From Selaginella moellendorffii (taxonomy: Eukaryota; Plantae; Lycopodiophyta): a stretch of DNA of 64,000 bases. Below are positions 19,103 to 54,164 of the stretch, piece after piece. The notes under the pieces are model-generated. The model did no database searches and was not told the origin of the DNA. It was given only the letters and a program-made list of their open reading frames with translations. Positions within the stretch are counted from its first letter, which is position 1. Each line of letters starts with the position of its first letter. A program made the translations under genes and the position numbers. Location of the stretch: contig NW_003314347.1 of NCBI RefSeq assembly GCF_000143415.4, forward strand, positions 62,001 through 126,000. The letters run 5' to 3'.

Positions 19103-20197
19103 ATGGAAGATGTTCTAGTTTCCAGAATTTTGGGTGTCACCCATTTCGAGCTCCCATTGCTTCCCAACAACATTGCATTTTATTGCCACCCGGAATTCCA
19201 ATCAATCAGCCTCCAAATCGACGAGTGGTTCCTTGACAAGATGAGAATCGCCGACGAGACTTCCAAGAAGAAGGTGCTGGAGTCCAGGATCGGTTTGTAC
19301 GCCTGTATGATGCATCCCCATGCTGAGAGAGAGAAGATTGTGCTGGCCGGGAAACATCTCTGGGCCGTCTTCCTCCTTGACGATTTGCTGGAATCCAGCG
19401 GCACACAAGAGATGCCGAAGCTCAACGCCACCATTTCCGACCTTGCCAGTGGAAATTCCAACGAGGATGTTACAAATCCTGTGTTGGTTCTCTACCGAGA
19501 AGTTATGGAAGAGATCCGGGCTGGTATGGAGCCACCATTGCTGGATCGCTACGTGGAGTGCCTGGGAGCTTCACTGGAAGCCGTGAAGGATCAAGTTCAC
19601 CACCGAGCCGAGAAAAGTATCCCTGGAGTGGAAGCTTACAAGCTTGCCCGCCGTGCCACTGGATTCATGGAAGCTGTCGGCGGTATCATGACCGAGTTCT
19701 GTATGGGAATCCGCCTCAACGAAAGTCAAATCCAGTCTCCAGTCTTTCGAGAGCTCCTCAATTCTGTGTCTGATCACGTTGTTCTTGTCAATGATCTCTT
19801 GTCCTTCCGGAAAGAGTTCTATGAAGGTGCTTGTCACCACAACTGGATCTCAGTTCTCCTGCAGCACAGCCCCAGCGGGACGAGGTTCCAGGATGTCATT
19901 GATCAGCTCTGCGAGATGATCCAAGAAGAAGAGCTCTCAATCCTGGCATTGCAGAGGAAGATTTCCAGTAAAGAAAATAGCGACTCGGAGCTGATGAAGT
20001 TCGCAAGGGAGTTCCCAATGGTTGCTTCCGGGAGCCTAGTGTGGTCGTATGTCACTGGCCGCTACCATGGCTATGGTAATCCGCTGCTGACTGGGGAGAT
20101 TTTCAGCGGAACTTGGCTGCTCCATCCCATGGCCACCGTCGTCTTGCCAAAGTCTACAGTCTTTTCATTAAACCATTTGGTATATTCTCATGTTTGA
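19103..20197 (+). CDS. MTPSL: Microbial terpene synthase-like protein, copy 2, 364 aa, intronless
   Basis: Same DDLLE / NDLLSFRKE / WSYVTGRY motifs; 9 substitutions relative to copy 1 over the 349 shared residues, plus a 15-aa C-terminal tail. Confidence 0.95.
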   Translation: MEDVLVSRILGVTHFELPLLPNNIAFYCHPEFQSISLQIDEWFLDKMRIADETSKKKVLESRIGLYACMMHPHAEREKIVLAGKHLWAVFLLDDLLESSGTQEMPKLNATISDLASGNSNEDVTNPVLVLYREVMEEIRAGMEPPLLDRYVECLGASLEAVKDQVHHRAEKSIPGVEAYKLARRATGFMEAVGGIMTEFCMGIRLNESQIQSPVFRELLNSVSDHVVLVNDLLSFRKEFYEGACHHNWISVLLQHSPSGTRFQDVIDQLCEMIQEEELSILALQRKISSKENSDSELMKFAREFPMVASGSLVWSYVTGRYHGYGNPLLTGEIFSGTWLLHPMATVVLPKSTVFSLNHLVYSHV

Positions 20198-27731: not shown

Positions 27732-30642
27732 TGTAAGGTTTATAAATACATATACATATATACATTACCTTGCCTAGGTAATACATTAATTATAATACTA
27801 AAGCATATAAACCATCCATTTGAAACTAAATCTAATCCATCCATTTTTGTATATAAACAGGGATCTAAACCCCAGTTAATATATCTATTTTTATATCCGA
27901 AACATTCACATTGATGGAGATAAAAAGCATTACAATTTAAAAGGCAAAGTTTTTTAGCAATGCTTTGCTTTAGTGTTCGGGATCATATTTTTTGTTTTTA
28001 TTTCTTCATTCTCTTTTAAATATAAATTTGTATTAGTTTTTTGCAAGATTTAGAACTCTAGCTATCTCTACTCTTTTTTCTGATCTTTATTATATTCTCT
28101 TCTCTTACCATGCCACACCATCATTGATTAAGGAGTATGTTATTTAAGGTTGTTAATGTTGCTTCATTGAATCGAACTTTTAGTGCTATGAAGTGTGACT
28201 ATGTTAGTGTTTCATCCATCCTTAATCTGTTACCGTCTCTAACTTCTATAGGACATGATTACACAGCTTGTCCTGTTCTTGGTGCTCTACTGTCTTTCGT
28301 TAATATAGAGCATGATTATGACATTGATTGGCGAGCTATGGATAATACAGTCTAGTTCTTAGAGAATATTCAAAGATTGAGTTTATGGAAAGACAATGTG
28401 TATGAGTGGATTCTAGATCGTTTTAATGAGTTTAATTATTATAAAGATAGCTTTGGAGATGAAGTGGAGATTTCATGGAGTAAGTGTCAGTCTTTCAATC
28501 TACCATTTGATCCTTTCTTTTTACCTTTTACTCTTTCCCATTTTTTTTTTTATTTCTTAGCTTAACCCACCTTCTTATGTTTTTAGTATTTTTTCCTTAT
28601 TTATAGTGTTTTCTTCTCTTGGCACATCAATTATTTGTGACTCTTATGATTTTCATTCTTAATCCAGTGTTGAGTTGAATGTTTTATGTCTTCTTTATAC
28701 TAATTTAGATATTATGTATGTGCATGAAGTTGAAAATCTTGTTCTTGTTTCATTAGCAAAGCTTTTGATCAATTCTGGTGTTGAGTATTCTTTTGTTCCA
28801 AAGGTTAAATCACTTTGGTCAGAGTTTCAAGTTAAATGCATATCCCTAATTATGAGTTCTAATAATAGTCTTTATTTTGCTAAGAAGTTTATGTGTTCTC
28901 TTGAGAGTGTGGATATTTCTATTAATTTTCCCATCTTAAGTGTTGAGTTATGTATTAAGGAGGTTGAATAGTATGAATCTTTTATTTATATTGTGGTGGC
29001 CGAAGTATTTTATAATAAGAAGTCCTTTATTTTCCAAGTTTTGAGTATATATCCTTTTGATTTCCTCATTTTTGCATTACCAACTGCTATAATTCCTTTT
29101 TTTATGTTTATTTATCCACTTTTTCTTCTTCCCCAATAGTTTTTCATCAATTTTTCTCATTTTTTCCTTTTTTTTTGACATTTCAAACTTTTTTTTCTTC
29201 GAAAGAAAGGGTAGAAGGGATGGATGGAAGTTTAGCCCCAATGATGGAGTAAGAATGAGTGAATATGGTAATGGAGCGAGGATGAACAATATGAATTATG
29301 GAGTGAAGATGAGTATAATGAATCCAAACAGAACATTTAACCCTAATGTAGTGAGGCTGAATAGATGTGATAATAGAGTGAGGCCAAACATAAATAGTGG
29401 AGTGAGGATGAGTGCAACGAGTCCAAATAGAGCTAGTGCTTCAAAGAAAAAATTCCTTCGAAGAGGGGGTAAAGAGGATGTGGAGGACAAATGAAGTGAG
29501 TTCAATTTCTTATATATAATTCTAAATAAAGATGAAGAAGTGGGTTTTATTTATGCTCATGAGTCCAAGTTAATAGTCATTTTGAAGGATCCTCAATAAA
29601 TAGACTTGGAGACAGGATATATTATTTACTACAATGGTGCTTTATGGATTGTAATGGCTCTCAAAATCCTTTATTTTGGTTCAAAGTTATGGTTTTGATG
29701 TTAGTTTGAACGTTTGGCAATTACACATAAAGTTGCAATTGGTTCATTGGGACTCCGTAATCGATTAATACTTATGTCATGGCTCTGGGTTTTCTTTCAG
29801 TCATGGTTATTAACAACATTATTAGTGGTTTTGTAGGAGTTTCATGTTCTTATGATAGTTTAGAATTGTCCAACAAAAACTCTAAATGTTTCACAAGATT
29901 TATTGTCATCACTTTTTCATCTTCTAGAGAGGAGGATGGTGTAAGATTTGTAAATACATGTATTAGGTAATACATTAATTATAGTACTAAAATATACAGA
30001 CCATCCATTTGGGATTGAATTTAATCCATCTATTTTTGTATATAAGTAGTGGTTTAAACCTTAATTAATATATCCCGAGTAGTTTATATAAGAGAAAAGA
30101 TTTTTTAAACTTTCTTGGTATGATATTATAGAATATTAGCACAAAGATGAGATATTGCTTAGAGATAAGATATATTATTTGCTACAATGATGCTTTATGG
30201 ATTGCAATGGCTCTAGAAATCCCTTGTTTTAGTTTAAAGTTATGACTTCAATATTGGTTTGAGCATTTAGCAGTTGCACATGGAGTTACAATTGATTCAT
30301 TAGGATTCTGTAGTTGACTAATATTTATGTTGTGGCTCTGGGTTTTATTTTAGTCATGGTTATTAACAACTTTGTTAGTGGTTTTATGGGAATTCAGGTT
30401 CTTATGATAATTTATAATCGTCCAACAAAAGCTCCAAATGTTCCACCTGATTTATTATCATTATTTTTTCATCTTTTGGAAGGGAGGATGGTGTAAAGTT
30501 TGTAAATACATGTATATATATACATGTGTTAATACATTATTTATATAAACCATTTATTTGAGACTAAATCTGATCCATCCATTCTTATATATAAACAAGG
30601 GTCTAAACCCCAATTAATATACTTATTCTTATATCCCAAACA
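27732..30642 (+). mobile_element. Degenerate AT-rich element with short (~150-170 bp) LTR-like direct repeats
   Basis: Repeats starting TGTAA at 27732, 29940 and 30493; the first and last end in ...AAACA (27904, 30642); purine tract GGAGGATGG precedes the two downstream copies. No TSD, PBS or coding domain recognised. Confidence 0.5.
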
Positions 30643-30720
30643 GTTTATATAAGAGAAAAGATTTCTTACATCTTCTTAGTATGATATTATAGAATATCGG
30701 CACAAAGATGAGACCTTGCT
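29609..30720. repeat. ~553-bp tandem duplication
   Basis: GAGA(C/T)A(G/A)GATATATTATTT starts at 29609 and 30162; each unit contains the short LTR-like repeat and the first ~25 bp of the DAO-like exon (GCACAAAGATGAGA). Confidence 0.8.
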
Positions 30721-31643
30721 TGCAAAAGTAAAAAGGTGGTCCATGGTTTCCTGTGCAAGGCTCAAGGAGCTCACCACCCTCGACCAAAACTTTGGTGTGA
30801 GAATGCGAATATCCAACTTCTTTATGAATCGAGTGGAGAACTGAGTAAAGTATACGGCTTCTGCCACAGACCCCAAGATCATCCAAGAGCTTGGCATCAG
30901 ACAAAGCTATGGAGTTGTGGACACTTACCAGCACATAGCGCCAGTTATTGACATGGAAGAGTTTATGTTCCAGCTGACAAGCTTTCTCTCCAAGCACCCA
31001 ATGTGCAGCCTTGACACAACCTATGGAAGTATTGACCAGGATTTGCTCGAAGTGGAGGACACTCTTCGCAAGGCTTACAAGGTCGATGCTATTGTGAATT
31101 GCCTGGGCTTGGGATTTTGCCAAGGACGAGCAGGGGAGCTCTTCTTAACGATGGAACCAGGTTCCCAGTTTTGGATCAGTGCTTGTGTGTCTCCCTCCAT
31201 AGGCGAGAGGCCGCTGAAGACAGAAACGAGAAAACACTGGTTGTGGGAGGAATAGCCAAGGAGGGCGAAGTCAATAACATTGAAAAGGTATCAGTGGTAC
31301 TTGTTTGCTGGATCGTTTTTAGCTAGAAATCTTTGCAGGATTATGAACCAGTGAAGAAAATGTTGGCCGGAGTTTGAGCTTCTATCCACCTCTGAGGAAC
31401 ACTGACATGTCCGACTACTCTCTCAGGACTGAGGCAGGCTCGCATAGAAAACATCAGGCTTGGAAGAGAGACAAGGCTGACAAAAGATGGCAATCCTTCG
31501 GCTATAGTCCATACCTATGGTCATGGTGGTGGTAAATGTTTCGTTTTTTTCGTCTTCTTTATTAACCTTGCTTTGATTTTCCAGGATTTGCTCCATTTGG
31601 TTGCGCAGAGAACCTAGTAGCCATCGCTAAGAGCATTCTCTAG
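30693..31643 (+). pseudogene. D-amino-acid oxidase (DAO)-family FAD oxidoreductase, microbial type, copy 1; 5'-truncated and frameshifted
   Basis: Stitched translation: RHKDETLLAKVKRWSM...GVRMRISNFF...YGVVDTYQHIAPVIDM...VDAIVNCLGLG...NDGTRFP...NEKTLVVGGIA...SGLRQARIENIRLGRE...AIVHTYGHGG^GF...GCAENLVAIAKSIL*. Contains DAO hallmarks (IVNC.GLG, GLR, H.YGHGG.G, GCA), an in-frame stop and frameshifts. Confidence 0.8.
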
Positions 31644-31792
31644 CAACAAAAGATCTTGACTAATTATAATGGTAAACGAGAATTTATTGAGACTTTAGCC
31701 CTTAATCTGCTTATGGGATGACTTCTCTTTCATCTCGTCCTTTTGATATGGAACTCGATGTACATTATCAGCCAACCTCCTGGCCTTATGGA

Positions 31793-32827
31793 CTAATCAA
31801 TGGCATAGTAATCGATGGTGATATTTTTACTAAAGTTGTTTTCCAGCCTCTTATTCTCAAATCTCAACTTCAAATAATCTTCCTGCATAAAGCTTTTGTA
31901 CTTTGGGTGACCACTCGCAAATTCTGGAATAGGAGCGATTCGAGTTTTGCCTTCGGGGAGATAGCTGTATACAAATGAGAAACGTTGAGCCTTGTTCGCT
32001 ACTACACGATGAACGGCACCTTTGTAAAGTCCGTTGGTCCACACCTTTTGGGTTGAAAACAATGTGAGAAAAATATTTAAACAAATACCTCCTGATCACT
32101 TACTTGTAAGATGTCTCCAAGGTTTATAATCAGTGAATTTTCTTCTGGCACTACAAGGTGCCAAGTACCATCTTTGAGGACCTGGTAACCAGGAACACGA
32201 TTAAGCTGGGACACCATGGTGAAGATGGTACCATCTTGATGAGGGGCGAGAACTTGGCCCTGATAGTCGGAGCAAGCTGGATAGTGGAGAAAATTGTAGT
32301 AATCTGCATTCTTGTCATAGCACTTGCGGAGAGTTTCGCCAGGAGCTCCCAAGCTTTGGGACAAAATGGTCATCAAGTTGTGGCCCAGGTTTTGCATTTG
32401 TTTTGACAATTCCACGGCATCTGGCCTGTGATTCACTAGCAAGCTATTTAGGAATCTCTAAACTTTTGTGAAAGTACCTGAAGCTCGATATTAAATCTGG
32501 CCACAAGGTGGACTTATCTTCTGCAGCAATCATGAAATGCTCCTTTCGATCTAGAGGTCCTCCTTTAGCACCACTTTGGTGCACGAAACCAACTGAATTG
32601 TTGGCGGTAGTAAATTTGCATTTGTATTCCAGAGGGAGCTCAAAGAAGCTGTGAGCATTTTGGAGTGCCTTGCTCAAGATGTGAGAATCCAAACCATGGT
32701 TAACCAATTGAAATAGACCAAATTCCTTACACGCTTTGTTGATCTTTTCCAACGATTCTAGGCGTTTCCTAGCAATTCCTGGGTCTTCCATAAATAATGC
32801 AAAGTCCACCACTGGAATGCCCTCCAT
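31793..32827 (-). CDS. 2-oxoglutarate/Fe(II)-dependent dioxygenase (DOXC class), copy A, 307 aa; exons 32827-32478, 32425-32104, 32044-31793
   Basis: IPVVDF...ACKEFGLFQLVNHGL N-domain; HQD...H iron triad (LAPHQDG; GAVHRVV) and RFS 2OG-binding motif; two GT-AG introns (52 and 59 nt) restore one open frame. Confidence 0.93.
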
Positions 32828-33063
32828 TTGATTACAACTGAGAATGTATTGGGGTGGAGCTTCTTAAGTACCAATTCTTTGTTCTCGGCTAAAGATTCTT
32901 GCCATGAAACACGACGGGAAACATGCCGGCTGAAGACGACTTCAGAAAGGTATATATAATATAAATCCTTCTTCCTAAAGATTTGTGGTATGAAACACGA
33001 CAAGTGTAATACTAACTTATGTGTTCGAACGCGACATATTATCCAGGTTCATATGATCAGACA

Positions 33064-35901
33064 TTAGCTGGCTGATGCTTCTAGCTTTGCCATGAGCGAG
33101 TAAGTGGATGTTTGTGTAACATCCAGCTTGAGCAACGCAGCATACGCAATCCTCCCAATCACCACATTGTTCCACTTCTCACACGCCGCCAGCAACGTCG
33201 TCCAAGTCACAACGCTGGGATCGTACGGCATCGTCTCCACAAGCCTGAGTGCCTCCTCGAGACGATTCGCGCGACCCAGCATGTCGACGAGGCAGTGATG
33301 GTGCTCGATCCCGGGCACCACCCCGTACACTTGGATCATCGCCCGGAACCATCTCTTCCCGGCGTCCACCATGCCCGCCCGGCTGCACGCCGCCAGCAGC
33401 GAGAGAAAGGTGACGCCGTTTGCATGGACGCCTTCACGTAGCATGGCGTGGAAAACCTCAAGAGCCCGGGTGGTGTTGCCTTGGACCGAGTGCACGGAGA
33501 CGAGGGCGCTCCAGATCACGGGGTCCGACCCCGTCTCGATCGACTCGAAGACCCGCTCGGCGTTTCCGGAGGATCCACACTTCCCGTACAGGTCCACCAG
33601 GCAGCTCGCCACCAGCAAGTCCGTCTCGATCGCCCCGCGGCAAATCTCGGCGTGGATGCTCCTGCCAGTCCCGAGGCAAGCTAAGTTTCCACCGGCCATG
33701 AGCGCTGCCGCGAAAGTCCGAGCGTTTGGAGCTACCATGGAGTTGTGCTTCATCCAAGAGAAGATCTCCAGGCCGAGGACACTCTCGCCGTTTTCCACGT
33801 AGCTGAGGATGAGAGCCGTCCACGAGACAACGTCGTGAAACTCCATCATATCAAACACTTTGCGAGCGTCCAAAACGCTGCCAGACTTCCCGTAAGCGTT
33901 GATCAGGGCACTCTCCACGAAAACATCCCAAGATTCGGACACAAGGGCTTGCGAGTGGATCTTTATCACCTTCTCCAAGCAGCGCGCTTTCACGAGCTGG
34001 GATCCATCCCCGGATCGCTGTGATTCTTCTCTCACCGCCAAACCAGCACAGGCTTGCAACGCAGCCACGAAAGTCCGAGCAGTCGGCTCGCAGTGTTGGC
34101 GCTGGATCATGCTCGAGAAGAGCTCGAGAGCGAGCTGGTCTTGTCCGTTATCGGCATAGCCGAGGATCATCGTGTTCCACGATACAGCGTCGCGACCATC
34201 CAGCATCCGATCAAAGACAGCCCGAGCGCTCTCCAGGCTCCCACACTTGACGTAGAGATCGATCAAAGTGTTGGCAACGAAAGTGTCCGAGTCACAGTGG
34301 CTTTGAGCTGCCAGAGCGTGGATCCTCGTCCCGAGTTCCAGGCAGCAAGCGCGAGTAGCATTGCTTTGCGTCGAAACGGCCAAGTTGGAGGCCGCCACTA
34401 GCACCGAGCTGAAGGTCCGAGCACTGGGAACGCATCCTTCGAATCGCATTTGCTCAAAGAGTTCGATGGCGGTCTCGTCCTGGTCGTTGCCGGCATAGCC
34501 GAGGATCAAAGTGCTCCAGGACACAGCGTCGTGATCCAGCATCCTGTCAAAGACTCTCCTGGCGTCCATCAAGCTTCCACATTTGGAGTACATGTCGACG
34601 AGTGTGTTTGCCACGAAAGTCTCCGACTCGTAGCTCCTCTTCAAGATCTCCAAGTGAAGAGCCATTCCCTTCCTCAAGCTCTCCACCTTGACGAGCTTTC
34701 CATCGATTTGCTGTCCAATTTCTTTCGCTGCCAAGCTCGAGCAAGCGACGAGCGCAGCGACGTAAGTTCTGGCATTTGGTTGACACTGCTGACACTCCAT
34801 CATTTGCTGGAACAATCCAAGTGCTAGCTCGCCAAAACCATTCTCAGCGTATCCCAGGATCAAACACGTCCAAGTCACCACGTCCCTCTGGAGCATTCGA
34901 TCGAAAACTTTGCGAGCTTCTGCAAGGTCTCCACACTTGATGTATAAATTCACTAGCGAGCTCGCCAAGAACATGTCCGACACGCAGCCATCGTCCAGAG
35001 CTCGAGAGTGAATCGCCATCCCTCTTTGCAGGACAGCAACTCTTCTGTCGACTTTCTTCTCTTTCTCGGCCAAGCTCGTGCAGGCCACGAGAGCAGCAAC
35101 GTAAGTCCGAGCATTCGGAGCGCATGCATCCAACTCCATAGTCGAGAAGAGTCCCAAAGCCAGTTCTTCCTCGCGGTTCTCCGCGTAACCGCATATCAAA
35201 GACGTCCAAGAAACCACGTCTCGAGCAGGCATGGTGTCGAACACCTTGCGAGCATCCCGCAAGCTTCCACACTTGGAATACATATCGATCAATGCATTTC
35301 CAACGTAGATATCCAAGAGCAACCCGGCAGCCAGAGCTTGAGAGTGAAAAACCATACCTTTCTCGAGAAACTTGATCATGACAGCCTTTCGTCCATGGCG
35401 GGCCTCTTCTTGCTCCTCTTCATCCCCTCTCTCTTTCTTCAAACCCGTCGAGCTCAAGCTGGCACAGGCCTTCAATCCAGCCACGAAAGTTCGAGCATTG
35501 GGTTTCAGTCCCTCTTGCCGGATCCTTGAGATGGACTCGAGAGCTAGCGTTTCATGCGAGTTCAGCGCAAATGCCAGCACGAGAGCGTTCCAGGAGACGA
35601 TGGTGCGCTCCGGCATTGCCTCAAACACTGCCATGGCATCCACCAGGCCGCCACATTTGGCATACAAGTTGATCAACGAGTTGGCGACGAAGACGCTGGA
35701 GCAGCAGCCATCACTGCCGCCGAGGACGTCGGAATGGATCCTCTTTCCGGCGTTGAGCTCTCTGATTGAGCCGCTACTGCAAGCCTTGATCGCCGCCATT
35801 AGAACCTCCAGAGATGCTTCTTCTTCTTCCTCGCGATAGAGGCGAACCAACGTACCCATGAGGTCTCGCCAGCGCGATTTGCGATGGATGTGGCATCGCA
35901 T
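33064..35901 (-). CDS. PLS-class PPR protein with C-terminal E domain, no DYW (~945 aa, intronless)
   Basis: Repeated ..MYSKCGSL.DAR.VFD.M..RDVVSW motifs; HHHCLVDMLGRANRLEEA...MPYDPSVVTWTTLLAAC ending; first in-frame ATG at 35901. Confidence 0.9.
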   Translation of the reverse strand: MRCHIHRKSRWRDLMGTLVRLYREEEEEASLEVLMAAIKACSSGSIRELNAGKRIHSDVLGGSDGCCSSVFVANSLINLYAKCGGLVDAMAVFEAMPERTIVSWNALVLAFALNSHETLALESISRIRQEGLKPNARTFVAGLKACASLSSTGLKKERGDEEEQEEARHGRKAVMIKFLEKGMVFHSQALAAGLLLDIYVGNALIDMYSKCGSLRDARKVFDTMPARDVVSWTSLICGYAENREEELALGLFSTMELDACAPNARTYVAALVACTSLAEKEKKVDRRVAVLQRGMAIHSRALDDGCVSDMFLASSLVNLYIKCGDLAEARKVFDRMLQRDVVTWTCLILGYAENGFGELALGLFQQMMECQQCQPNARTYVAALVACSSLAAKEIGQQIDGKLVKVESLRKGMALHLEILKRSYESETFVANTLVDMYSKCGSLMDARRVFDRMLDHDAVSWSTLILGYAGNDQDETAIELFEQMRFEGCVPSARTFSSVLVAASNLAVSTQSNATRACCLELGTRIHALAAQSHCDSDTFVANTLIDLYVKCGSLESARAVFDRMLDGRDAVSWNTMILGYADNGQDQLALELFSSMIQRQHCEPTARTFVAALQACAGLAVREESQRSGDGSQLVKARCLEKVIKIHSQALVSESWDVFVESALINAYGKSGSVLDARKVFDMMEFHDVVSWTALILSYVENGESVLGLEIFSWMKHNSMVAPNARTFAAALMAGGNLACLGTGRSIHAEICRGAIETDLLVASCLVDLYGKCGSSGNAERVFESIETGSDPVIWSALVSVHSVQGNTTRALEVFHAMLREGVHANGVTFLSLLAACSRAGMVDAGKRWFRAMIQVYGVVPGIEHHHCLVDMLGRANRLEEALRLVETMPYDPSVVTWTTLLAACEKWNNVVIGRIAYAALLKLDVTQTSTYSLMAKLEASAS

Positions 35902-36006
35902 TCTTGGCGGCCACAAGTGCCCAAATGCCCGCCTCCGCGAGAGCTCATCCTGGAACCAAAAAATAGGGCGTTTGACTAGTCACTGGTCATCAAAAGCCCT
36001 AATATC

Positions 36007-36850
36007 AGCTCCACCCTAATAAAATGTCACCCAGGAATTGTTAGGAAACGCCTAGTATCGTTGGAAACGATCAACAAAACGTAACGAATTTGGTCTGTTT
36101 CAATTGGTTAACCATGGTTTGGACACATCTTGAAAATGCTCACAGTTTCTTTGAGCTCCCTCTGGAATACAAATGCAAATTTACTACCGCCAACAATTTC
36201 AGTTGGTTTCGTGCACCAAAGGAGGACCTCAAAGATCGGAAGGAGCATTTTCTGATTGCTGCGGAAAAAAAATCCACTTTGTGGCCAGATCTACCACCAA
36301 ACTTCAGGTGGTTTGTAGATTATTATATGTTTTTAAGTAGCTTGCAGAATTGTCACAACAAATGCAAAAACTGGGACGTAATGGCAATTTTGTCCCAAAG
36401 CCGCAATTGCTATGACAAGAATGGAGATTATTACAACTTCCTTCACTATCCAGCTTTCTCAGACTACCAGGGCCAAGTTCTCGCCCTCATCAAGACGGTA
36501 CCATCTTCACCATGGTCTCCCAGCTTAAGGTTAACTTGGCATCTTGTGGTGCCAGAAGAAAATTCACTGATTATCAACCTTGGAGACCTTATACAAGTAA
36601 GTGATCTGGATTAACTCATTCTTTGTGGTTTACAACCAAAAAGGTGTGCACAAACGGACTTTACAAAGGTGCTGTTCATCGTGTAGTAGCGAACAAGGCT
36701 CAACGTTTCTCCTTTGTTTACAACTATGTCCCCGAAGGCAAAACTAGAATCGCTCCTCTTCCACCCAAAGTAGATTTATTTGAAGTTGCGATTTGAGAAC
36801 AAGAGGCTGGGAAACAGCTTTAGTAAAAGCATCACTATCAAATTGATTAG
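36007..36850 (+). pseudogene. 2OGD pseudogene, copy of A/B with deletions and frameshifts
   Basis: Collinear with copies A/B (NAHSFFELPLEYKCKFTTANN; YYNFLHYP; HLVVPEENSLIINLGD; same intron sites) but the start is lost and the frame is broken. Confidence 0.88.
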
Positions 36851-36929
36851 TATTGAAATCAATAAAAACTAATTCAATTGTCATGGTCAAGCCGAGGATC
36901 AAAGCTCGGATAAAAGACCCAATTGTACA

Positions 36930-37955
36930 CAAAGACTCTCCAGGTGTCCATCAAGCCTCTGCACCTTGTGTTATCCTGCCAGCGACATCACTTCTGGTTG
37001 ACACTGCTGCAGGAACAATCCAAGTGCTAGCTTGCCAAAGCCATTCTTGTGGAGCATTCTTGCGCCAACTTGACGTAAAAATTCACCAGCAAGCTCGCAA
37101 CGAACATGTCAACTCGCTCATCCAGAAATTGAGAATGAATCATGATCTCCCGTTGCAAGACAAACTTCACAACTCTTCCACTGACTTTCTTCTCTTTCTC
37201 GGCCAAGCAGGGTTTAGAATGAAAGCACGTGGATGTGCTAGACGTGGTGCAGGAAAACATCAGCGGGAGATCGAGCGAGCAGTAAGTCCGAGCATTGGGA
37301 GCGCATACATCCAACTCCGTGTCCCAAAGCCAATTCTACCTCGTGGGTCGCTGCATATCGAAGATGTCCAAGAAACCAGAGAGAAACCCGGCAGCCAGAG
37401 CTTGAGAGTGAAAAAACTATGCCTTTCTCAAGAAACTTGTCCATGGCGGGCCTCTTCTTGTTCCTCTTCGTCGGCTCTTTCTTTCTTCGAACCCATCGAG
37501 CTCAAGCTAGCACAGGCCTTTCAATCCAGCGACGAAAGTTCAAGCATTGGGTTCCAGTCCCTCTTGGCGGATCCTTGAGATGGACTCGAGCGCTATCATT
37601 TCATGCGAGTAATGCCAGCATGAGAGCGTTCCAGGAAACGATGGTGCGCTCCAGCATTCCGCCATGGCATCCACCAGGCTGCCGCATTTGGCATACAAGT
37701 TGATCAGCGATGTTAAAGAAACAAGTTACAGTGCAGGTAGGAAGTGCATATGCTGCGTTTTCCCCCTTGGGCAAGGGAGCGAGTTGGCAGACGCTGGAGC
37801 AGCAGCAATCACTCCGAGGATGTCGGAATGGATCCCTTTCCCGGCGTCGCTTCTTCTTCCTCGCGATGGAGGCGAACCAACGTACCCATGAGCACGATTT
37901 GAGTTGGATGAGCATCCTTGGCGGCTGCAAGGGCCCAAATGCCCGCCTCCGCGCC
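36930..37955 (-). pseudogene. PPR pseudogene, degenerate copy of the 5' part of 33064-35901
   Basis: Shared strings such as CCCAAATGCCCGCCTCCGCG (~35920 vs ~37934) and ERTIVSWNAL; fragmented ORFs. Confidence 0.85.
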
Positions 37956-37999
37956 AGGCTTTTGAGTCAATATTTTAAAAATCAAAACAAGTCAATACA

Positions 38000-38255
38000 A
38001 CTTTCTCAACTATCCCAGTTGCTCCGACTACCCGTGCCAAGTTTTCGCCCCTCATCAAGACGGTACCATCTTAATCGTGTCAAGTTCTCAAATATGATAA
38101 TAGCGGTGCCATCCAACCTTGGAGACATTATATCAGGATTACTGGAGGTTTTAATTTGTTCTTTACAGGTGTACATTACAAGGTGTTTACTGTCCACGTA
38201 TGCCCGACTGAGAAGAAGCATGGGACCGTGTTCATCACGTAATAGCAAACAAGGA
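38000..38255 (+). pseudogene. Short 2OGD fragment
   Basis: CGCCCCTCATCAAGACGGTACCATCTT (PHQDGTI), AACCTTGGAGACAT and GTTCATCACGTAATAGCAAACAAG match 2OGD exons 2-3. Confidence 0.75.
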
Positions 38256-38593
38256 GCCGCCGAGGAGTTTAGTTCTGCCGCCCAGGAAGTCGCTCTTTCT
38301 AGCGTCGAAGTGCTCTGATCGAGCCGCCACTCATTAAGATGCTTCTTTTTCGCGATCTGCGATGGCGCATTGGCGGCCACGACCGTCATTGACTTCGTGT
38401 TCAAATTATAACCCTAGTTCCGAACACGAAAATCAGTCCATAAAGAACCTGTTGTTGGCTTGGATCACTGTCTGCTCATAAATAGTGCACATTGTAAACA
38501 GTCCCTTGTCGTGTTTCAAGCCACGAATCTTTAGCAAAGCACAAAGATTTGCTACTTAAGAAGCCCCACCAACACAAGTCTCAGCGTTGTAAA

Positions 38594-39631
38594 ATGGCGG
38601 CCATTCCAGTGGTGGATTTTGCACTATTTGTGGAAGACAAAGCTGGCCCAGATATTGCTAGGAAACGCCTGGAATCACTGGCAACAATCAACAAAGCGTG
38701 TAGGGAATTTGGTCTGTTTCAAGTGATTAACCATGGTTTGGATTCTCTCCTCTTGAGCAAGGTACTCCAAAACGCTCACAGCTTCTTTGAGCTCCCTCTG
38801 GAGTACAAGTGCAAATTTAGCACTGCCAACAACGGAATGGGTTTCGTTCACCGAAGTGGTGCTAAAGGAGGACCTCCTGATCGAAAGGAACATTTCATGT
38901 TTGCTGCGGAAGGTAAGTCCACCTTGTGGCCAGATCTAGTACCAAGCTTCAGGTACTTTCACAAAATCTTACATATTGTTAAATAGCTTACTCGTGAATC
39001 ACAGGCCAGATGCTGTGGAAGTGTCAAAACAAATGCAAAAACTGTGCGACAACATGATGGCCATTTTGTCCCAAAGCCTAGGATCTCCTGACAAAACACT
39101 CCGGAACTGCTTTGACAAGAATGAAGATTACTACAACTTTCTCCACTATCCAGGTTGCTCTGACTACCAGGGCCAAGTTCTCGCCCCTCATCAAGACGGT
39201 ACCATCTTCACCATAGTGTCACAACTTAATCGTGTTCCTGGTTACCAGGTTCTCAAAGATGGGACTTGGCATCTTGTAGTGCCAGTAGAAAATTCACTAA
39301 TTATCAACCTTGGAGACATCATACAGGTAAGTGGTATTTGTTCAAATCTTTTTCTCTCATTGTCTTCAACGGAAAAAAGGTGTGGACAAATGGACTTTAC
39401 AAAGCTGCCGTTCATTGCGTAGTAGCCAACAAGAAGCAGCGTTTCTCGTTTGTTTACCACCATGTCGCTGAAGGCAAAACTAGGATCGCTCCTCTTCCAG
39501 AATTTGTGAGTGATCAGCCAAAGTACAAAAGCTTTCTCCAGGAGGAGTATTTGAAGTTGCGTTTTGAGAACAAGAGGTTGGGAAACAACTTCGAGAAAAA
39601 CATCACTATTGATTATTATCTTGTTGATTAG
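38594..39631 (+). CDS. 2-oxoglutarate/Fe(II)-dependent dioxygenase, copy B, 310 aa; exons 38594-38952, 39005-39326, 39380-39631
   Basis: Same exon structure as copy A; HQD...H (AAVHCVV) and RFS motifs retained; frame intact after splicing. Confidence 0.93.
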
Positions 39632-39691
39632 GCAATTATCTGTTTTTAGATCTTTTAAGACTCAATAAATTTCTAGGTTTAGGTTTCAAAG

Positions 39692-40105
39692 ATGGTGAAG
39701 GTGACGCTAAAGAGTGCAGAGGGCGATGTGTTTGAGGTTGATGAAGAGTTAGCTTTGGAATCTCTGATGGTGAAAAACATGATTGAGGACGTTGGGTTAG
39801 ATTCGGCGATATCTTTACCCAATGTTTCCAGCACTATCCTGGCCAAGGTGATTGAATACATCAAGTTTCATATGGACGCTCAAAAGGACGGGAGCAAGAA
39901 GACCAGCGAGGAGATCAAGGCTTTTGACGACGACTTTGTTAATGTTGGTATTCCCACGCTCTTTGAAATGGTATTGGCCTCAAACTATCTCAACGTCAAG
40001 AGTTTGCTGAGTTTAACGTGCAACACTGTTGCCAACATGATCAAGACCAAGCCACCTGCAGAAGTTAAGGAGATGTTCACATCTGCTAAACAAGCTAAAG
40101 CGTGA
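39692..40105 (+). CDS. SKP1: SKP1-like protein, intronless, C-terminally truncated (137 aa)
   Basis: KVTLKSAEGDVFEV...ISLPNVSSTILAKVIEY...TLFEMVLASNYLNVKSLLSLTCNTVANMIK; lacks the usual FNIKNDFTPEEE...ENQWAFE end. Confidence 0.88.
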   Translation: MVKVTLKSAEGDVFEVDEELALESLMVKNMIEDVGLDSAISLPNVSSTILAKVIEYIKFHMDAQKDGSKKTSEEIKAFDDDFVNVGIPTLFEMVLASNYLNVKSLLSLTCNTVANMIKTKPPAEVKEMFTSAKQAKA

Positions 40106-40164
40106 TTTATAGAGTTTCTTATGTTTTAGTTTTTTTATTCAGTAGCTCTATTCTTTACTGCTAC

Positions 40165-41294
40165 CTAGAAAAGCCAAGGAATTTTTGTTGGTGGAGGTTC
40201 TCTTGCGCATCCAAACAATAATGAAAATCCTGGCAAATTAAAACCAAAGTTAATATAAAAGAATATTTATTATTTTGAGAAGTTCTACCGCGCACCGTGC
40301 CATCTTGCCTTGTCTCTCTTCCAAGGTTGATGTTTTCTATGCGAGCCGGCCTCAATCCTACACGTCAGAGGTGGACAGAAGCTCAGACTCCGGCCAAACA
40401 TGTGTGTCACATGAGAAAACGATGATTGTGGAGGAATAACCGAGGAGAACGACTGGGAAGTTGGCAATATTGACAAGGTCAGTATGTTTGAGGCGTCTTT
40501 TTCCTGGTTCGTGTTGTAAATTTTAATTCTTTGCAGGAGTATAACACACAAGTACTGATCCAAGGCTGGGAACTTCGTTCCATCATTGGCAATGCTGAGA
40601 AGAGCTCCCCTGAGGGGATAGACGAGGTCGTTGGCAAGCTCCCGGCTAGCCAAGCCAGTGCCTTGTAATCTTTGTGAAGAACGTCCTCAACTTCGACCAA
40701 ATCTCTTCCATAGCTCGTGTCAAGGCTGCACATCGGGTGTTCGGAGAGACAGCTCGTCAGCTGGAACATAAACTGGTCCGTGTTGATAACCAGTGCTAGC
40801 ATCCCCAGCTTTGGCTGATGCCGAGCTCTTGGATAGTCCTGGAGTCATGGCGGAAGTTGTCAACTTGTGTCTGGAGCTCCAGCATCTTCTCCAACAATCC
40901 TCCACCCAGTTCTTAGAAAAGTTGGACATTCATTCTCACTGGGGAGCTCCTTGAACCTCGCATATGAACCATGCACCACATCTTTGCCTTTGCAAGCGAG
41001 GTCTCATCTTTTTGCCGACCTGCAAGAAAAAAAGTATATGAACTCAAATACAAACAGGTTTTTCTTATAGCTTTATAGAAAAAGAAAGGAGGTGTGAGCT
41101 TACCAAGACAAAAGGTGGCCACTCCCAAAGTGCTCCAGCAATCTGAGAAGTGAACTTGATCTCAGCAAAAAGAGAGGCAAATTGCTTGGAGAGGATAGTG
41201 ACTCAAAAGTCCCCAAGCTGTTGTCACTTGCTCCAACAACAAGAATGTGGATGACTTCCTTGTTAACATGTCCATAATTCAATTTTTCATTCAT
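40165..41294 (-). pseudogene. DAO-family FAD oxidoreductase, microbial type, copy 2; near full length but with deletions and frameshifts
   Basis: Stitched translation: HILVVGA..TTAWGLL..VTILSKQF...TSQIAGALWEWPPFV^GRQKDETSLAKAKMWCM...LEKMLELQTQVDNFRHD...ELANDLVYPLRGALLSIANDGTKFP...GLRPARIENINLGRE; GT-AG introns; Rossmann GxGxxG partly deleted. Confidence 0.82.
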
Positions 41295-41339: not shown

Positions 41340-44300
41340 TATATCTAAGGACTTTGAGAGTGGTGATACATAAACTTCTTCAGCTCGTCAAGAATTAATT
41401 TATTGAAAGCTTCAATATTTAAAGTTTTATGATCTTCACCAATTTCAAAATCTTTATTGACATATTTCTTATATATCTTGTAACCTTCTTGAAAAATGAC
41501 TTCAATTAAGTCTTCTATAGCCCTATGCTGGACAACCAAGGTGGCTAAGTGCTATTAATATCTTAATCATTGATATATAGATGTTATCTAAGCTTGTGAG
41601 AAGTATTTTTTCTTTTTTTCTCTAAAACTTAGACCTTTTCCATTTTAGGATTAGCTAGAAAAAGCCAAAAAAAAGAAGAAGAAATTTTATGGGCTTACTA
41701 AGTGTAGTAAATGCTTTTAGTGCTTTTTGTGTGGCACACATCTTCTCTTTTTTTTCTGGCTATGTCTTCACTTTAATAAATTTGTTAATATTATTAAATT
41801 TTATCAAAAATTCCTCCTTGATAATCTCGAGTTGCTTATCTTTGAACTAATCTTGTATATGTGATTCACATTTTTTGCTCCCCTTTTGACACTATAGCAA
41901 CACTAAGATTTAACTATCAAAAACAGTTTTCTTGTTTATAGTTTTTGACCTTGATATGTTTAAGTAGCTTCTTGTCCCCATACATGTAAATAGGCGAGGT
42001 AAAGGACAACCATAACTCAATAATGGTTGGAATCCCTTTCTATAAAGATTTGAAATATCTGAAAAATAGAGATAAAGATAGAAAGTGCCTCACGTGATAG
42101 CTTGGGTGGTGGTGCTTGTGAGCACTCAAAGCTATTATAGAGGGAACCATAGCACCACTCCCCCTCATGCAATAGCTTGAGAGGTTGCATTCACCACCAT
42201 TGAAGCTATCATGGGGGGAGGCCATGGCATGCTACCACTTGAGTTGCCATGAGGGGAGCCATGACACTACTCCCCTCATGCAGAGCTTGGGCCTCACCAC
42301 CATCTGAGTTGTTATGGAGGAAACCATGCCACCACTTCTCACCTCGCCACTATCTAAGTTGCTAGCCATGGTGCTGCTCCCTTTCATGTGGCAGCTCAAT
42401 TCATGATTGATTCCTATGATTAAGATTGCCACTAAAACTACCATAGCATCATGCTTTTGCAACAAATCACACTTGCCCAGCTTAAGCAGCTATGCTAAGA
42501 ACTCTAACCCAATTTTAATGTTGACATCAACCCTAGAAACCTTTAAAACTTTAAATAAATTTTTGGAGAAATTTTTATAAAGAGTGTTTTGATTTTCCCT
42601 CATTTTAGGTACAATTAAAGATCCAATAATGAGTGATGTTGTGATGGCAATAATGAAATATCAAGAGAGAGAAATGTTGCTAGAAATAGAATGACGGATA
42701 GAGAAAAGATCCTTATGTGCTTTCTTTAAGTTTCATTTTGATTGGGTTAGAATGTTGCAAAAGGCTCAAGGTATAATATTGTTTTAGGTTACTATGATAA
42801 AGATATTTTTAGGTGGGAAAATATTTCACACCAAATCAGATTGTAGAAGTATATTTTCAACTAAAGAAGCTTATAATAGGTTCAAATGATGCCTCAACCT
42901 AGAGTAAAGAAGTTTTTTCTTTAATGACAAATGAGAAAGAGTTGTGTGCACCCTTGGGAAAAACAAGTTTTTCAATGGCAAATACAACAAAAATGTAAAT
43001 ATAAAAAAATATGTGGGTAGTGGATTTATATTTGAGCTACTAAAGACTATGAAAATTGCAAGCAAACTAATTTGAAGTAATTATGTGGGAACTCTTGTGA
43101 ACCAATCCAAACTTTCTAAATACTATAATAGAAACTTAGTGTTTAAGCTTCCACCTTCTCAAAATTCTATAGAGGGGATGCATTAGGACCAAGATGGGCA
43201 TGTTTAGGTGAAATTTATGGCTTGGAGAGTTGATTATTTTGCTGGAAGAGTCTGAAGGAGTAACTATGTTAGATTTTTTTAATGTTTCAAATTAAACTAC
43301 TTATATTATGATTAGTTTTAAGAGTTTAATTGCAAAGAGTTTCATAACATATTCCATATTTGACCTAAACGTGGTGAGGTACTTATAGCACTTGCAAAGA
43401 GTTTCCACGATGAAGGAGAATGTGGAGCTCATATCTTTAAGTTATCTGAAATAATATGATGTTTACTAGAGCAACAATTCATGTTAATTAATATAATCAT
43501 CAAATGGGGAATGGGATATATTTAGAGTATTTGGACGTGGTTATATCTATTATTTCAAAGGTAATATATTAATCTTCGAGTGCTCAACTTGCATTATAAC
43601 TATTAAAGTAGTAAATGAGTTGACTATTCAAAATTTCTTGTGATTAATTTCAAACACTTTGATGCCTTCACTTTAACAATTGAGTAAAACACTAGATAGT
43701 CTTTCAGCACTTACTAGCAAATAAAAGTATATTTAAAGAGTATCTTTAGTAAACTAATCATAGTATAGTAAAAGTATAAGTAAATACAAAAAATTTATAA
43801 AAACATACTTTATAAAACATGAAGTGATAGTGTGGACTATGAGGGCAGTGCCTCAAATTGCAAAGAAGGGTTGTTAATTGTGATTTGAAATGGTCAGCTT
43901 AAGGCTCACAAAAGTGGCTGCAAATCAACTTGGTGTTGGAGAATGTGCAGCGAAGAATGGGGGGAAATGCAAGTGGCCAAAATGGCTTGAGCATTTACAA
44001 CTTATGCAAGGATTACCTCATAACAAGGCAATGGCATTGAGCTTGGGCATTGTGATGGTGAAGAGGGAAGTGTTTCAAATAGGATTGCAAGTGGTGGAGT
44101 AATTGCCACAGTAGAAGCAAGGGCAAAAGTATTATGATGGTTTTGGAATTTTTAGGTGGTGTGGATGGGAGGTGGTGTTAGAGCTAGATGTTGTGTTTGG
44201 TGTTTAAGTAGCTGTAAAGAAGAATTGGGTGCTATTATTTGTGCATTGAGCCACATGAGTTATATGAGCCACAATTAGGGTGGAAACCTTGTTATAGTAG

Positions 44301-53872: not shown

Positions 53873-54164
53873 TCAATCAAAGCGAGAGATTTGTAAATAG
53901 ATATTCGTTCTCCTAGGGTTAGGGTTTAAGCCCTAAAAAAGATTGTCACTCAGTTAGGGTTTCACCCAAAGATGTATTTTTCCGAGCTGTCAACAACCTT
54001 TAGATAGGGACAAATAGGTACCTCTTCATAGTAACCACATGTTGCTAAACAATTTAAAACGTGCCAATACTTTTTACCAGTCACAATCTCAGGCATTGGC
54101 GGGGGATTTAAACTCGTCCATCTTTCTTGTGGCAGCAAACGCTCTTGGGCAGAGGAGCAAAGAA

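What the first reader, a model, noticed from the sequence alone, without database searches (positions are those of the whole stretch)
30693..41294. Two hidden, intron-containing D-amino-acid-oxidase-family genes of microbial type: candidate horizontal acquisition
Seen: stitching short ORFs at 30.7-31.6 kb (+) and 40.2-41.3 kb (-) yields a DAO-fold flavoenzyme: HILVVGA, TSQIAGALWEWPP, GVVDTYQHIAPVID, DAIVNCLGLG, YPLRGALLSIANDGTKFP, LVVGGIA, GLRPAR, IVHTYGHGG.G..GCA. Established: GLRP and H.YGHGG.G are hallmarks of classical DAO/D-aspartate oxidases, which are typical of animals, fungi and bacteria rather than angiosperms. From recall, unverified: SQIAGALWE.PP and NDGT.FP resemble a fungal/bacterial subfamily. 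Inference: a microbe-derived gene that carries spliceosomal introns, duplicated and decayed here, with a possible intact paralogue elsewhere. Its position among native genes argues against contamination. It would be a second microbe-like enzyme family beside the MTPSLs.
Basis: partly seen in the sequence, partly recalled or inferred. Interest (0 to 1): 0.85.

Follow-up and report, generated by a model that had tools for sequence, protein, structure and literature searches.

The report
Two dead fungal-type DAO-like gene copies
This stretch of the spikemoss Selaginella moellendorffii holds two broken copies, with no transcription detected, of a flavoenzyme gene related to D-amino-acid oxidase; its closest intact relatives are mostly fungal, so it is a relic of a gene that plants probably took up long ago, not a working enzyme.

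Summary
The pieces are homologous to a distinct subfamily of the D-amino-acid/D-aspartate oxidase superfamily (Pfam PF01266).

- **State of the copies.** Copy A (30693-31643, +) has no first exon. Copy B (40168-41294, -) has lost the HxYGHGG motif. Both carry stops, frameshifts and deletions at different places. They lie at the two ends of an old inverted segmental duplication. The same arrangement occurs in the second haplotype, so this is not contamination. Three short GT-AG introns (84, 51, 53 nt) show long residence in the plant.
- **Expression.** No RNA signal was found, but the test was weak.
- **Intact paralogue.** No intact Selaginella protein of this family is in the protein collections searched. 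The genome itself could not be searched.
- **Origin.** Intact relatives are overwhelmingly fungal and bacterial. The family also occurs in Marchantia (an intact, intronless gene) and in a Psilotum transcript, which is the nearest non-Selaginella hit. A single plant clade is rejected (AU p = 0.010). The Selaginella branch is long and its position unstable, so an ancient fungal-type transfer is likely but not proven.
- **Prior record.** The fragments already exist as GenBank hypothetical proteins. The scan has not noted this family before on other DNA.

Interest is modest.

The parts
30693..31287 (+). Copy A, large exon (equivalent to residues about 65-290 of the fungal relative P0007). It has an in-frame stop at 30842-30844, a roughly 24-nt deletion and frameshift around 30840-30870, and deletions at 31115-31131 and after 31215. 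There is no exon 1 upstream.
   Evidence: the AG acceptor at 30691-30692 is shown.
31288..31338 (+). Copy A intron, 51 nt, GT...AG.
   Evidence: The homology to P0007 and P0175 resumes after it. It is conserved in haplotype 2.
31339..31531 (+). Copy A third exon. It has two stops and a frameshift in its first half, then GLRQAR (31426-31443) and IVHTYGHGG (31504-31530).
31532..31584 (+). Copy A intron, 53 nt, GT...AG, phase 1.
   Evidence: with haplotype 2 for comparison.
31585..31643 (+). Copy A last exon (FGCAE motif at 31596-31610; TAG stop at 31641-31643).
41104..41294 (-). Copy B exon 1. It starts at ATG 41294 and contains a Rossmann remnant HILVVGA, then TTAWGLL in a second frame, a stop, and TSQIAGALWEWPP in a third frame.
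41020..41103 (-). Copy B intron 1, 84 nt, GT...AG, lying between the WEWPP motif and the RQKDET motif.
   Evidence: The same acceptor context is seen at the start of copy A.
40168..41019 (-). Copy B, the remaining exons. They are read in three frames with stops and deletions. YPLRGALLSIANDGTKFP, GLRPAR and FGCAR are kept. The HxYGHGG motif and the downstream introns are degraded.
29605..30721 (.). AT-rich tandem repeat of about 553 bp that replaces the 5' part of copy A. One unit duplicates the acceptor site and first 29 nt of the exon (30064-30160 matches 30625-30721 at 86%).
   Evidence: families D1, D2, D6, D7. This stretch is absent from haplotype 2.
31788..32915 (-). Left arm of the inverted duplication: an intact-looking 2OG-Fe(II) dioxygenase gene next to copy A.
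   Evidence: I1 at 89%, I2, I11; Pfam DIOX_N; haplotype 2 annotation.
38508..39636 (+). Right arm of the inverted duplication: the paralogous 2OG-Fe(II) dioxygenase gene. An intronless SKP1-like gene (39692-40105) lies between it and copy B.

Best explanation
The two loci are independently decayed pseudogenes with no detectable transcription. They derive from one ancestral gene that contained introns and encoded an FAD-dependent oxidase of a distinct subfamily of the D-amino-acid/D-aspartate oxidase superfamily. This subfamily is marked by the motifs SQIAGALWEWPP and NDGxKFP.

The intact enzyme would have bound FAD through an N-terminal Rossmann fold. It would have held the substrate carboxylate with the arginine of the GLRP motif (the equivalent of Arg283 in human DAAO). 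It would have oxidised a D-amino-acid-like substrate to the imino acid while producing H2O2. This mechanism is inferred from homology, not shown. The subfamily's real substrate is unknown, because the equivalents of Tyr224 and Tyr228 are Met and Phe.

The gene was copied, together with a 2OG dioxygenase and a PPR gene, in an old inverted segmental duplication. Each copy then broke at different places. Most residues that are invariant across the family are still present, so the gene was under selection for most of its time in the lineage.

Its origin in vascular plants is most likely an ancient uptake of a fungal-type gene, possibly before lycophytes and ferns split. I put this origin sub-claim at about 0.5. 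The pseudogene and family assignment I put at about 0.9.
For: - **Family.** The piece window:30845-31114 hits full-length proteins that match PF01266 at 1e-20 to 6e-38. The fungal relative P0007 aligns end to end with human and pig DAAO and with DDO structures at 8e-25 to 1e-16.
- **Decay.** Stops, frameshifts and non-3n indels lie at different sites in A and B. A lacks exon 1, and B lacks HxYGHGG.
- **Past constraint.** At the family columns that are at least 90% conserved and alignable, the pieces keep 47/57 (A), 37/41 (haplotype-2 A) and 48/59 (B).
- **Duplication.** Inverted repeats I1-I11. A versus B is 72-76% identical, while alleles are 95-97.5% identical. There are 124 A-type versus B-type fixed differences and no mixed patterns.
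- **Residence in the plant.** Gene order is the same on the second haplotype scaffold GL377585. There are three GT-AG introns of 51-84 nt, not shared with the crinoid gene. The Apophysomyces and Marchantia genes are intronless.
- **No RNA detected.** Next to none of copy B's sampled words occur in 19 runs guessed to be RNA, kept as contigs. Copy A received zero reads in three RNA-seq runs.
- **Origin.** The top hits of full-length relatives are fungi of all major phyla plus bacteria. The careful tree places Selaginella with Psilotum inside a group of chytrid, Mucorales, Pythium and Bradysia sequences. Monophyly of all plant sequences is rejected (AU p = 0.010).
Against: - Support for Selaginella plus Psilotum is only 66/75. 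Without Psilotum, Selaginella moves next to Dikarya. Its stem branch is very long (1.8-2.3 changes per site).
- The Psilotum sequence is a 158-aa transcript fragment with an aberrant tail. It could come from a fungal associate.
- The plant clade for the AU test was named after a first quick tree had been seen.
- The expression test is weak. The neighbouring dioxygenase control reached a depth of only 1-2, and only about 12% of each run was read.
- The length rule of the word-indexed protein search and its 120-row display limit mean that moderately similar full-length plant homologues could have gone unseen.
- The whole Selaginella genome could not be searched for an intact paralogue.
Confidence: 0.8

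Rival explanations
1. No transfer took place. The subfamily is an old eukaryotic gene, or two old paralogues, inherited vertically into land plants. It was lost many times, including in seed plants, and is now dying in Selaginella.
For: The family occurs in fungi, an oomycete, a crinoid, an insect, liverworts, a fern transcript and a lycophyte. Deep branches among the eukaryotic groups are poorly supported (49/24 and 36/49). The Selaginella introns show long residence.
Against: Plant monophyly is rejected (AU p = 0.010). Marchantia groups with the crinoid sequence and the bacterial set (94/93), while Psilotum sits in a 97% supported set with early-diverging fungi, Pythium and Bradysia. No algal, moss, hornwort or seed-plant member appeared among the hits. 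Intron positions are not shared between Selaginella and the crinoid, and the Marchantia and Apophysomyces genes have no introns.
Confidence: 0.3
2. This is a recent, Selaginella-specific acquisition from a microbe. It would be parallel to the MTPSLs nearby and perhaps acquired with them.
For: Fungal and bacterial proteins dominate the family. Three MTPSL genes lie in the same window. Without Psilotum, Selaginella sits next to Dikarya fungi.
Against: The best non-Selaginella hit is a fern transcript (70 bits against 54 for the best fungus). It shares a His..Cys segment and a two-residue insertion with Selaginella. Identity to any fungal protein is only about 35-45%. The gene gained three introns and then underwent an old duplication (A versus B 72-76% identical). 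Native genes (UPRTase, a GTPase and others) separate it from the MTPSLs.
Confidence: 0.1
3. The locus is not dead. Either a functional product is made by unusual splicing, or an intact paralogue elsewhere in the genome carries the function and these are merely spare copies.
For: GenBank holds gene models for all four allelic copies (SELMODRAFT_426739, 426743, 413282, 413286). Many conserved residues are retained. The genome outside the window and L001 could not be searched.
Against: The models are 114-192 aa fragments that skip the lesions, whereas intact relatives are about 400 aa. No full-length Selaginella protein appeared in searches of 1.84 and 5.8 billion proteins. Haplotype 2 even has half of the large exon inverted. 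No RNA signal was found.
Confidence: 0.1
4. The DAO-like sequence is microbial contamination or an assembly artefact.
For: None beyond the microbial affinity of the family.
Against: Both haplotype scaffolds carry both copies in the same gene order, at 95-97.5% identity. The copies lie between plant genes (PPR, SKP1-like, 2OG dioxygenase). They contain short plant-type introns.
Confidence: 0.01

Closest known systems
Classical D-amino-acid oxidase (human and pig DAAO, PDB 2du8 and 1dao) and D-aspartate oxidase (PDB 6rkf)
   Same: The same fold family (PF01266) and a full-length alignment of the intact relative P0007 at 1e-24 to 1e-16. Shared features are an N-terminal Rossmann FAD motif, the GLRP/GFRP arginine (Arg283 equivalent) and the HxYGHGGxG motif near the C-terminus.
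   Different: Identity is only about 25%. The subfamily has its own SQIAGALWEWPPAVCG and NDGxKFP motifs. The Tyr224 and Tyr228 equivalents are Met and Phe (alignment; residue roles are from my own knowledge). No NCBIfam family reaches its cut-off, and no member has a solved structure or a tested substrate that I could find. The Selaginella copies are broken.
Marchantia polymorpha MARPO_0095s0060 (annotated 'D-amino-acid oxidase') and its M. paleacea orthologue
   Same: The same subfamily in a land-plant nuclear genome. The gene lies on a 31-Mb chromosome beside fasciclin and NB-ARC genes.
   Different: The Marchantia gene is intact and intronless (a 444-481 aa ORF). It branches with the crinoid sequence and the bacterial set, not with Selaginella and Psilotum. 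It is about 40% identical to the Selaginella piece.
Fungal 'FAD dependent oxidoreductase' proteins such as Apophysomyces ossiformis EC973_000532 and Blyttiomyces helicus
   Same: These are the closest intact full-length relatives of the Selaginella pieces (44% identity over 81 aa). All subfamily motifs are shared.
   Different: They are intact, and the Apophysomyces gene is intronless. Their function is uncharacterised.
Microbial-type gene families of seed-free plants (the MTPSL terpene synthases of Selaginella; the fungal fruit-body lectins of bryophytes, PMC11906373)
   Same: A microbial-type gene sits in plant chromosomes, is patchy among seed-free plants and is absent from seed plants. The lectin paper argues for fungal transfer before land plants diversified, followed by repeated loss.
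   Different: Those families have intact, expressed members in the species concerned. Here only relics remain in Selaginella, and the transfer itself is not demonstrated.

Membership tests
DAAO/DDO superfamily (Pfam PF01266 DAO) | Significant match to the PF01266 profile | tested here: inconclusive
Single exon pieces give no Pfam hit. Their phmmer and tblastn partners P0007, P0018, P0020 and P0029 match PF01266 at 7e-31 to 6e-38 over the whole profile. Membership therefore rests on transitive homology.
DAAO/DDO superfamily (Pfam PF01266 DAO) | N-terminal Rossmann GxGxxG FAD-binding motif | tested here: inconclusive
   Copy B keeps HILVVGA (41229-41249), then shifts frame before TTAWGLL (41204-41224). 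Copy A has no exon 1. Intact relatives have the full motif.
DAAO/DDO superfamily (Pfam PF01266 DAO) | GLRP/GFRP motif with the carboxylate-binding arginine (human Arg283) | tested here: met
   GLRPAR in copy B (40341-40358) and in haplotype-2 copy A; GLRQAR in copy A (31426-31443). It aligns with the GFRPVR segment of human DAAO through P0007.
DAAO/DDO superfamily (Pfam PF01266 DAO) | C-terminal HxYGHGGxG...GCA motif | tested here: met
   IVHTYGHGG (31504-31530) and FGCAE (31596-31610) in copy A. Copy B has lost HxYGHGG by deletion but keeps FGCAR.
Classical D-amino-acid oxidase (EC 1.4.3.3) in the strict sense | Active-site tyrosines equivalent to human Tyr224 and Tyr228 | tested here: not met
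   In the alignment of P0007 to a human-type DAAO chain, these positions are Met and Phe. The haplotype-2 copy reads ...EDMVFIP. I therefore do not file this as a classical DAAO, only as a DAAO-like subfamily.
Classical D-amino-acid oxidase (EC 1.4.3.3) in the strict sense | Demonstrated oxidation of D-amino acids | not testable with these tools
   I found no characterised member of the subfamily. No NCBIfam model reaches its cut-off, and the paper searches found nothing.
Functional protein-coding gene | Uninterrupted reading frame across all exons, and transcription | tested here: not met
   Multiple stops, frameshifts and deletions in both copies and both haplotypes. No RNA signal was found (low sensitivity).
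Horizontally acquired gene in a plant genome | Integrated in host chromosome (synteny, host-type introns, both haplotypes) | tested here: met
Horizontally acquired gene in a plant genome | Nests with strong support inside a donor clade and is absent from the recipient's sister lineages | tested here: inconclusive
   It groups with early-diverging fungi, Pythium and Bradysia, plus Psilotum, but with weak support (66/75, 67/91, 49/97), and the placement is unstable. Plant monophyly is rejected at p = 0.010. Plant genomes could not be searched directly.

The most novel reading that the evidence does not exclude
Land plants acquired this DAO-like subfamily at least twice. One uptake was of an early-diverging fungal type (a chytrid- or Mucoromycota-like donor, the kind of fungus that partnered early land plants) into the vascular-plant stem before lycophytes and ferns split. 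The other was a separate uptake in liverworts. The gene worked for a very long time, gaining three introns, and was then lost in seed plants. It is caught here in the act of dying in Selaginella.
Probability: 0.3. Interest if true: 0.55.

Novelty: new member of a known kind. Interest (0 to 1): 0.33.

Why it matters
If the ancient-transfer reading holds, this adds a flavin oxidase family to the list of microbial-type genes that seed-free plants carried and seed plants lost. It would also suggest that early vascular plants could oxidise D-amino-acid-like compounds with a fungal-type enzyme. In practice, four GenBank 'hypothetical protein' models of S. moellendorffii (SELMODRAFT_426739, 426743, 413282, 413286) should be re-annotated as pseudogene fragments. 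The intact Marchantia gene is the accessible plant member for testing what this uncharacterised subfamily does. As it stands, the locus itself is a non-functional relic, so the finding is of moderate interest only.

Tried and rejected
- **Pfam and PDB on single pieces.** Pfam on ten single exon pieces gave no hits. PDB phmmer on the 136-aa open segment gave only a chance hit to scytovirin. The pieces are too short and too decayed on their own.
- **NCBIfam.** Scans of intact relatives found no family above its cut-off.
- **Papers.** I searched for DAAO with Selaginella, HGT or Marchantia, and for the Marchantia gene id. Nothing relevant turned up. Ma et al. 2022 on land-plant HGT is not in the held library.
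- **Shared intron positions.** The crinoid introns lie elsewhere. The Apophysomyces and Marchantia genes are intronless. The Bradysia gene is not on record.
- **Metagenomic relative P0283.** It looked at first as if it shared Selaginella's intron 1. On inspection it is a frameshifted gene with an in-frame TGA, from an unknown eukaryote, and is uninformative.
- **The 87% BLAST identity between the two haplotypes at copy A.** This looked anomalous against 96% in the flanks. A proper alignment gives 95% plus indels, so it is ordinary allelic variation.
- **Gene conversion between A and B.** Rejected: 124 fixed A-versus-B differences and no mixed site patterns.
- **Earlier scan notes.** None mention a DAO-like gene elsewhere in this genome.


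Full report
**Source organism.** The intronless SKP1-like ORF at 39692-40102 is in the protein collection. It clusters at 90% identity or more with Selaginella moellendorffii XP_002972943 / D8RNY6. The gene models that match the finding are also SELMODRAFT entries. The window therefore comes from an 830,751-bp scaffold of S. moellendorffii. Earlier scan notes say the same.

**Observation.** A motif scan gives their coordinates. The pieces lie in different frames and are interrupted by stops.

Each piece alone is too short for Pfam or PDB. A 90-aa piece of copy A (window:30845-31114) was scored by phmmer against 1.84 billion representative proteins. It gave 32 hits at E <= 1e-3:
- The S. moellendorffii fragment models P0003, P0005 and P0006.
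- A Psilotum nudum transcript, P0004 (1.8e-14, 70 bits).
- Full-length proteins of 320-440 aa.

The full-length hits carry the same motifs and match PF01266 over the whole profile at 1e-20 to 6e-38.

**Anatomy.**

Copy A (+):
- It starts at 30693, directly after an AG acceptor.
- Its large exon runs to 31287.
- A 51-nt GT-AG intron follows (31288-31338), then an exon to 31531, then a 53-nt phase-1 GT-AG intron (31532-31584).
- The last exon ends at the TAG at 31641-31643.
- It has no first exon. Upstream lies an AT-rich tandem repeat of about 553 bp (29605-30721). This repeat even duplicates the acceptor site and the first 29 nt of the exon, and it is missing from the other haplotype.

Copy B (-):
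- It starts at ATG 41294.
- Exon 1 (to 41104) is read in three frames: HILVVGA, then TTAWGLL, then TSQIAGALWEWPP.
- An 84-nt GT-AG intron follows (41103-41020).
- The remainder runs down to about 40168.

The A-versus-B DNA alignment shows many indels that are not multiples of three. The lesions differ between the two copies:
- A has an in-frame stop at 30842-30844. It has deletions of the segment around the FRHD motif, of the segment before the RGALL motif, and of the segment before RNEKTLVVGG. It has two stops early in its third exon.
- B has a stop and frameshifts in exon 1 and around the NFSKNWVED segment, has lost GVVDxYQH and HxYGHGG, and has degraded downstream introns.

I found no lesion shared by A and B. 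The gene was therefore probably still intact when it was duplicated; this is an inference.

**Second haplotype.** Locus L001 (GL377585.1, 817-838 kb) carries the same gene order: MTPSL, UPRTase, senescence regulator, GTPase, DAO-like, 2OG dioxygenase, PPR, 2OG fragment, 2OG dioxygenase, SKP1-like, DAO-like. It is 94-97% identical to the window outside the DAO-like copy A.
- Alleles are 95.0% (A) and 97.5% (B) identical.
- A versus B is only 72-76% identical, with 124 fixed A/B differences and no mixed patterns.
- The duplication therefore long pre-dates the haplotype split, and there has been no gene conversion.
- The haplotype-2 allele of A keeps a continuous 108-aa piece (L001:9887-10210), but half of its large exon is inverted.
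- All four copies are pseudogenes. Contamination is excluded.

**Duplication.** Copies A and B lie at the ends of an inverted segmental duplication. The arms include the two 2OG-Fe(II) dioxygenase genes (31788-32915 and 38508-39636, 82-89% identical, Pfam). The middle holds an intact 950-aa PPR gene (33064-35916, -), a third partial dioxygenase copy and PPR fragments.

**Past constraint.** 95 alignment columns are at least 90% conserved in 66 full-length family members. Where alignable, the Selaginella pieces retain 47 of 57 (A), 37 of 41 (haplotype-2 A) and 48 of 59 (B). Decay is thus recent relative to the age of the family.

**Expression.**
- Next to none of copy B's sampled 31-mers occur in 19 runs of the species kept as contigs (guessed to be RNA).
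- Three raw-read RNA-seq runs were each sampled at about 12% (9.2 million reads). They gave zero reads on copy A and a depth of only 1-2 on the neighbouring dioxygenase gene.
- No transcription was detected, but sensitivity is low.

**What the family is.** P0007 aligns over its whole length with solved human and pig D-amino-acid oxidases (about 1e-24 to 1e-19) and human D-aspartate oxidase (1e-16). In that alignment:
- The GLRP arginine matches the GFRPVR arginine of human DAAO. From established knowledge this is Arg283, which binds the substrate carboxylate.
- HSYGQGGAG matches HNYGHGGYG, which contains Gly313.
- The positions of Tyr224 and Tyr228 are Met and Phe.

No NCBIfam model reaches its cut-off, and I found no characterised member. 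I therefore file this as a distinct, uncharacterised subfamily of the DAAO/DDO superfamily. It probably works like a DAAO: FAD-dependent dehydrogenation of an alpha-amino acid-like substrate, with reoxidation by O2 to H2O2. It is not a classical DAAO.

**Distribution.**
- With P0007 as query, 1,076 proteins score E <= 1e-10. The best 120 are almost all fungal (Mucorales, a chytrid, many Ascomycota and Basidiomycota). They also include Pythium insidiosum and the fungus gnat Bradysia coprophila.
- Name look-ups identify P0021 as Marchantia polymorpha MARPO_0095s0060, annotated 'D-amino-acid oxidase', and P0020 as a crinoid protein.
- With the full-length Marchantia protein (P0175) as query, 5,269 proteins score E <= 1e-10. 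After M. paleacea (90% identity), the next hits are fungi and bacteria at about 50% identity (Priestia, Actinomycetota, Chloroflexi, Bacteroidota).
- The Marchantia gene is one uninterrupted ORF on a 31-Mb chromosome, next to fasciclin and NB-ARC genes.
- A profile of the Psilotum and Selaginella pieces found no further named plant sequence. It found only the model of copy B in this scaffold (P0305) plus fungal or metagenomic fragments.
- No seed-plant, moss, hornwort or algal protein surfaced. Two limits apply. The word-indexed search shows only 120 rows and has a length rule, and plant genomes themselves could not be searched.

**Phylogeny.**
- A quick tree of 90 rows joined Selaginella and Psilotum (SH-aLRT 85). 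They sat inside a set with a chytrid, Mucorales, Pythium and Bradysia. Dikarya formed a separate clade, and Marchantia branched nearer the bacterial grade.
- A careful tree of 63 rows (LG+C20+F+G4 PMSF) gave (P0039,(Psilotum,Selaginella) 66/75) 67/91 in the same neighbourhood. Marchantia grouped with the crinoid sequence and the bacterial set (94/93).
- Holding all five plant rows together costs 17.3 log-likelihood units (AU p = 0.010). The group was named after the quick tree had been seen.
- Psilotum and Selaginella share a His..Cys segment with a two-residue insertion that fungi and Marchantia lack.
- Robustness is limited. Without Selaginella, Psilotum stays in a 97% supported set with early-diverging fungi, Pythium and Bradysia. 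Without Psilotum, the long Selaginella branch moves next to Dikarya (SH-aLRT 74).
- In no analysis does Selaginella join Marchantia or bacteria.
- Only public gene models and single exon pieces were used for Selaginella. Rows left out were near-duplicates above 70% identity, P0030 (odd composition), and most unnamed Dikarya-like rows in the smaller set.

**Reading.** Shown:
- Homology to the DAAO/DDO superfamily.
- Pseudogene state of all four allelic copies.
- An old inverted duplication.
- Residence in the plant genome, with short introns.
- The family is mainly fungal and bacterial, with Marchantia and Psilotum as the other plant holders.

Inferred:
- The ancestral gene was functional in the Selaginella lineage until after the duplication.
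- The vascular-plant lineage obtained it from a fungal-type donor long ago (about 0.5), rather than by vertical descent with massive loss (about 0.3) or by a recent Selaginella-specific transfer (about 0.1).

**Novelty and score.** The fragments are already in GenBank and UniProt as hypothetical proteins, one of them labelled as having an FAD-dependent oxidoreductase domain. No paper on them was found. Patchy microbial-type genes in seed-free plants are a known kind, for example the MTPSLs and the fungal fruit-body lectins (PMC11906373). DAAO activity has also been reported once from maize (cited in PMC4699246). This is a new member of a known kind, dead at this locus, and its interest is about 0.33.

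Noticed in passing
window 14117-15166 (+), 19103-20197 (+), 54039-55271 (+): Three intact, intronless ORFs (349, 364 and 410 aa) match Pfam Terpene_syn_C_2 at 4e-24 to 9e-28. These are microbial-type terpene synthase-like (MTPSL) genes. The first two are a recent tandem duplicate, and both match the same haplotype-2 gene. They share the window with three 2OG dioxygenase copies and the DAO-like relics, but native housekeeping-type genes separate them.
   Followed up: partly
window 39692-40105 (+): An intronless SKP1-like gene (137 aa) lies between the dioxygenase and DAO-like copy B on the right arm of the inverted duplication. It has no counterpart in the 150-bp gap on the left arm. This suggests either insertion of a retrocopy-like gene after the duplication or its loss from the left arm.
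   Followed up: no
window 27775-30721: An AT-rich tandem repeat (units of about 550 bp, 71-86% identical) occupies the place where haplotype 2 has about 870 bp, including a NifU_N-like 66-aa ORF. It is a haplotype-specific insertion or expansion that also copied the first 29 nt of the DAO-like exon.
   Followed up: partly
window 36090-37930: At the centre of the inverted duplication lie a third, decayed 2OG dioxygenase copy (about 36.1-36.8 kb, +) and fragments of the PPR gene (about 36.9-37.9 kb). They are 87-98% identical in blocks to the intact copies, so the region has been rearranged more than once.
   Followed up: no
L001:9638-9857 (haplotype 2, GL377585.1): In the second haplotype, the 5' half of the large DAO-like exon is inverted relative to the rest of copy A. 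This structural difference between alleles is absent from the window.
   Followed up: partly
L006:1560-2761 (JGI metagenome 3300044691 contig): An unidentified eukaryote in a metagenome carries a member of the same subfamily. It has frameshifts near the WEW motif and an in-frame TGA where relatives have Arg (CGA). It is another decaying copy or a low-quality assembly.
   Followed up: partly
window 41345-41539 (-): A 64-aa ORF sits just upstream of copy B and is conserved in haplotype 2. It has no Pfam match and may be an exon of a neighbouring gene.
   Followed up: no
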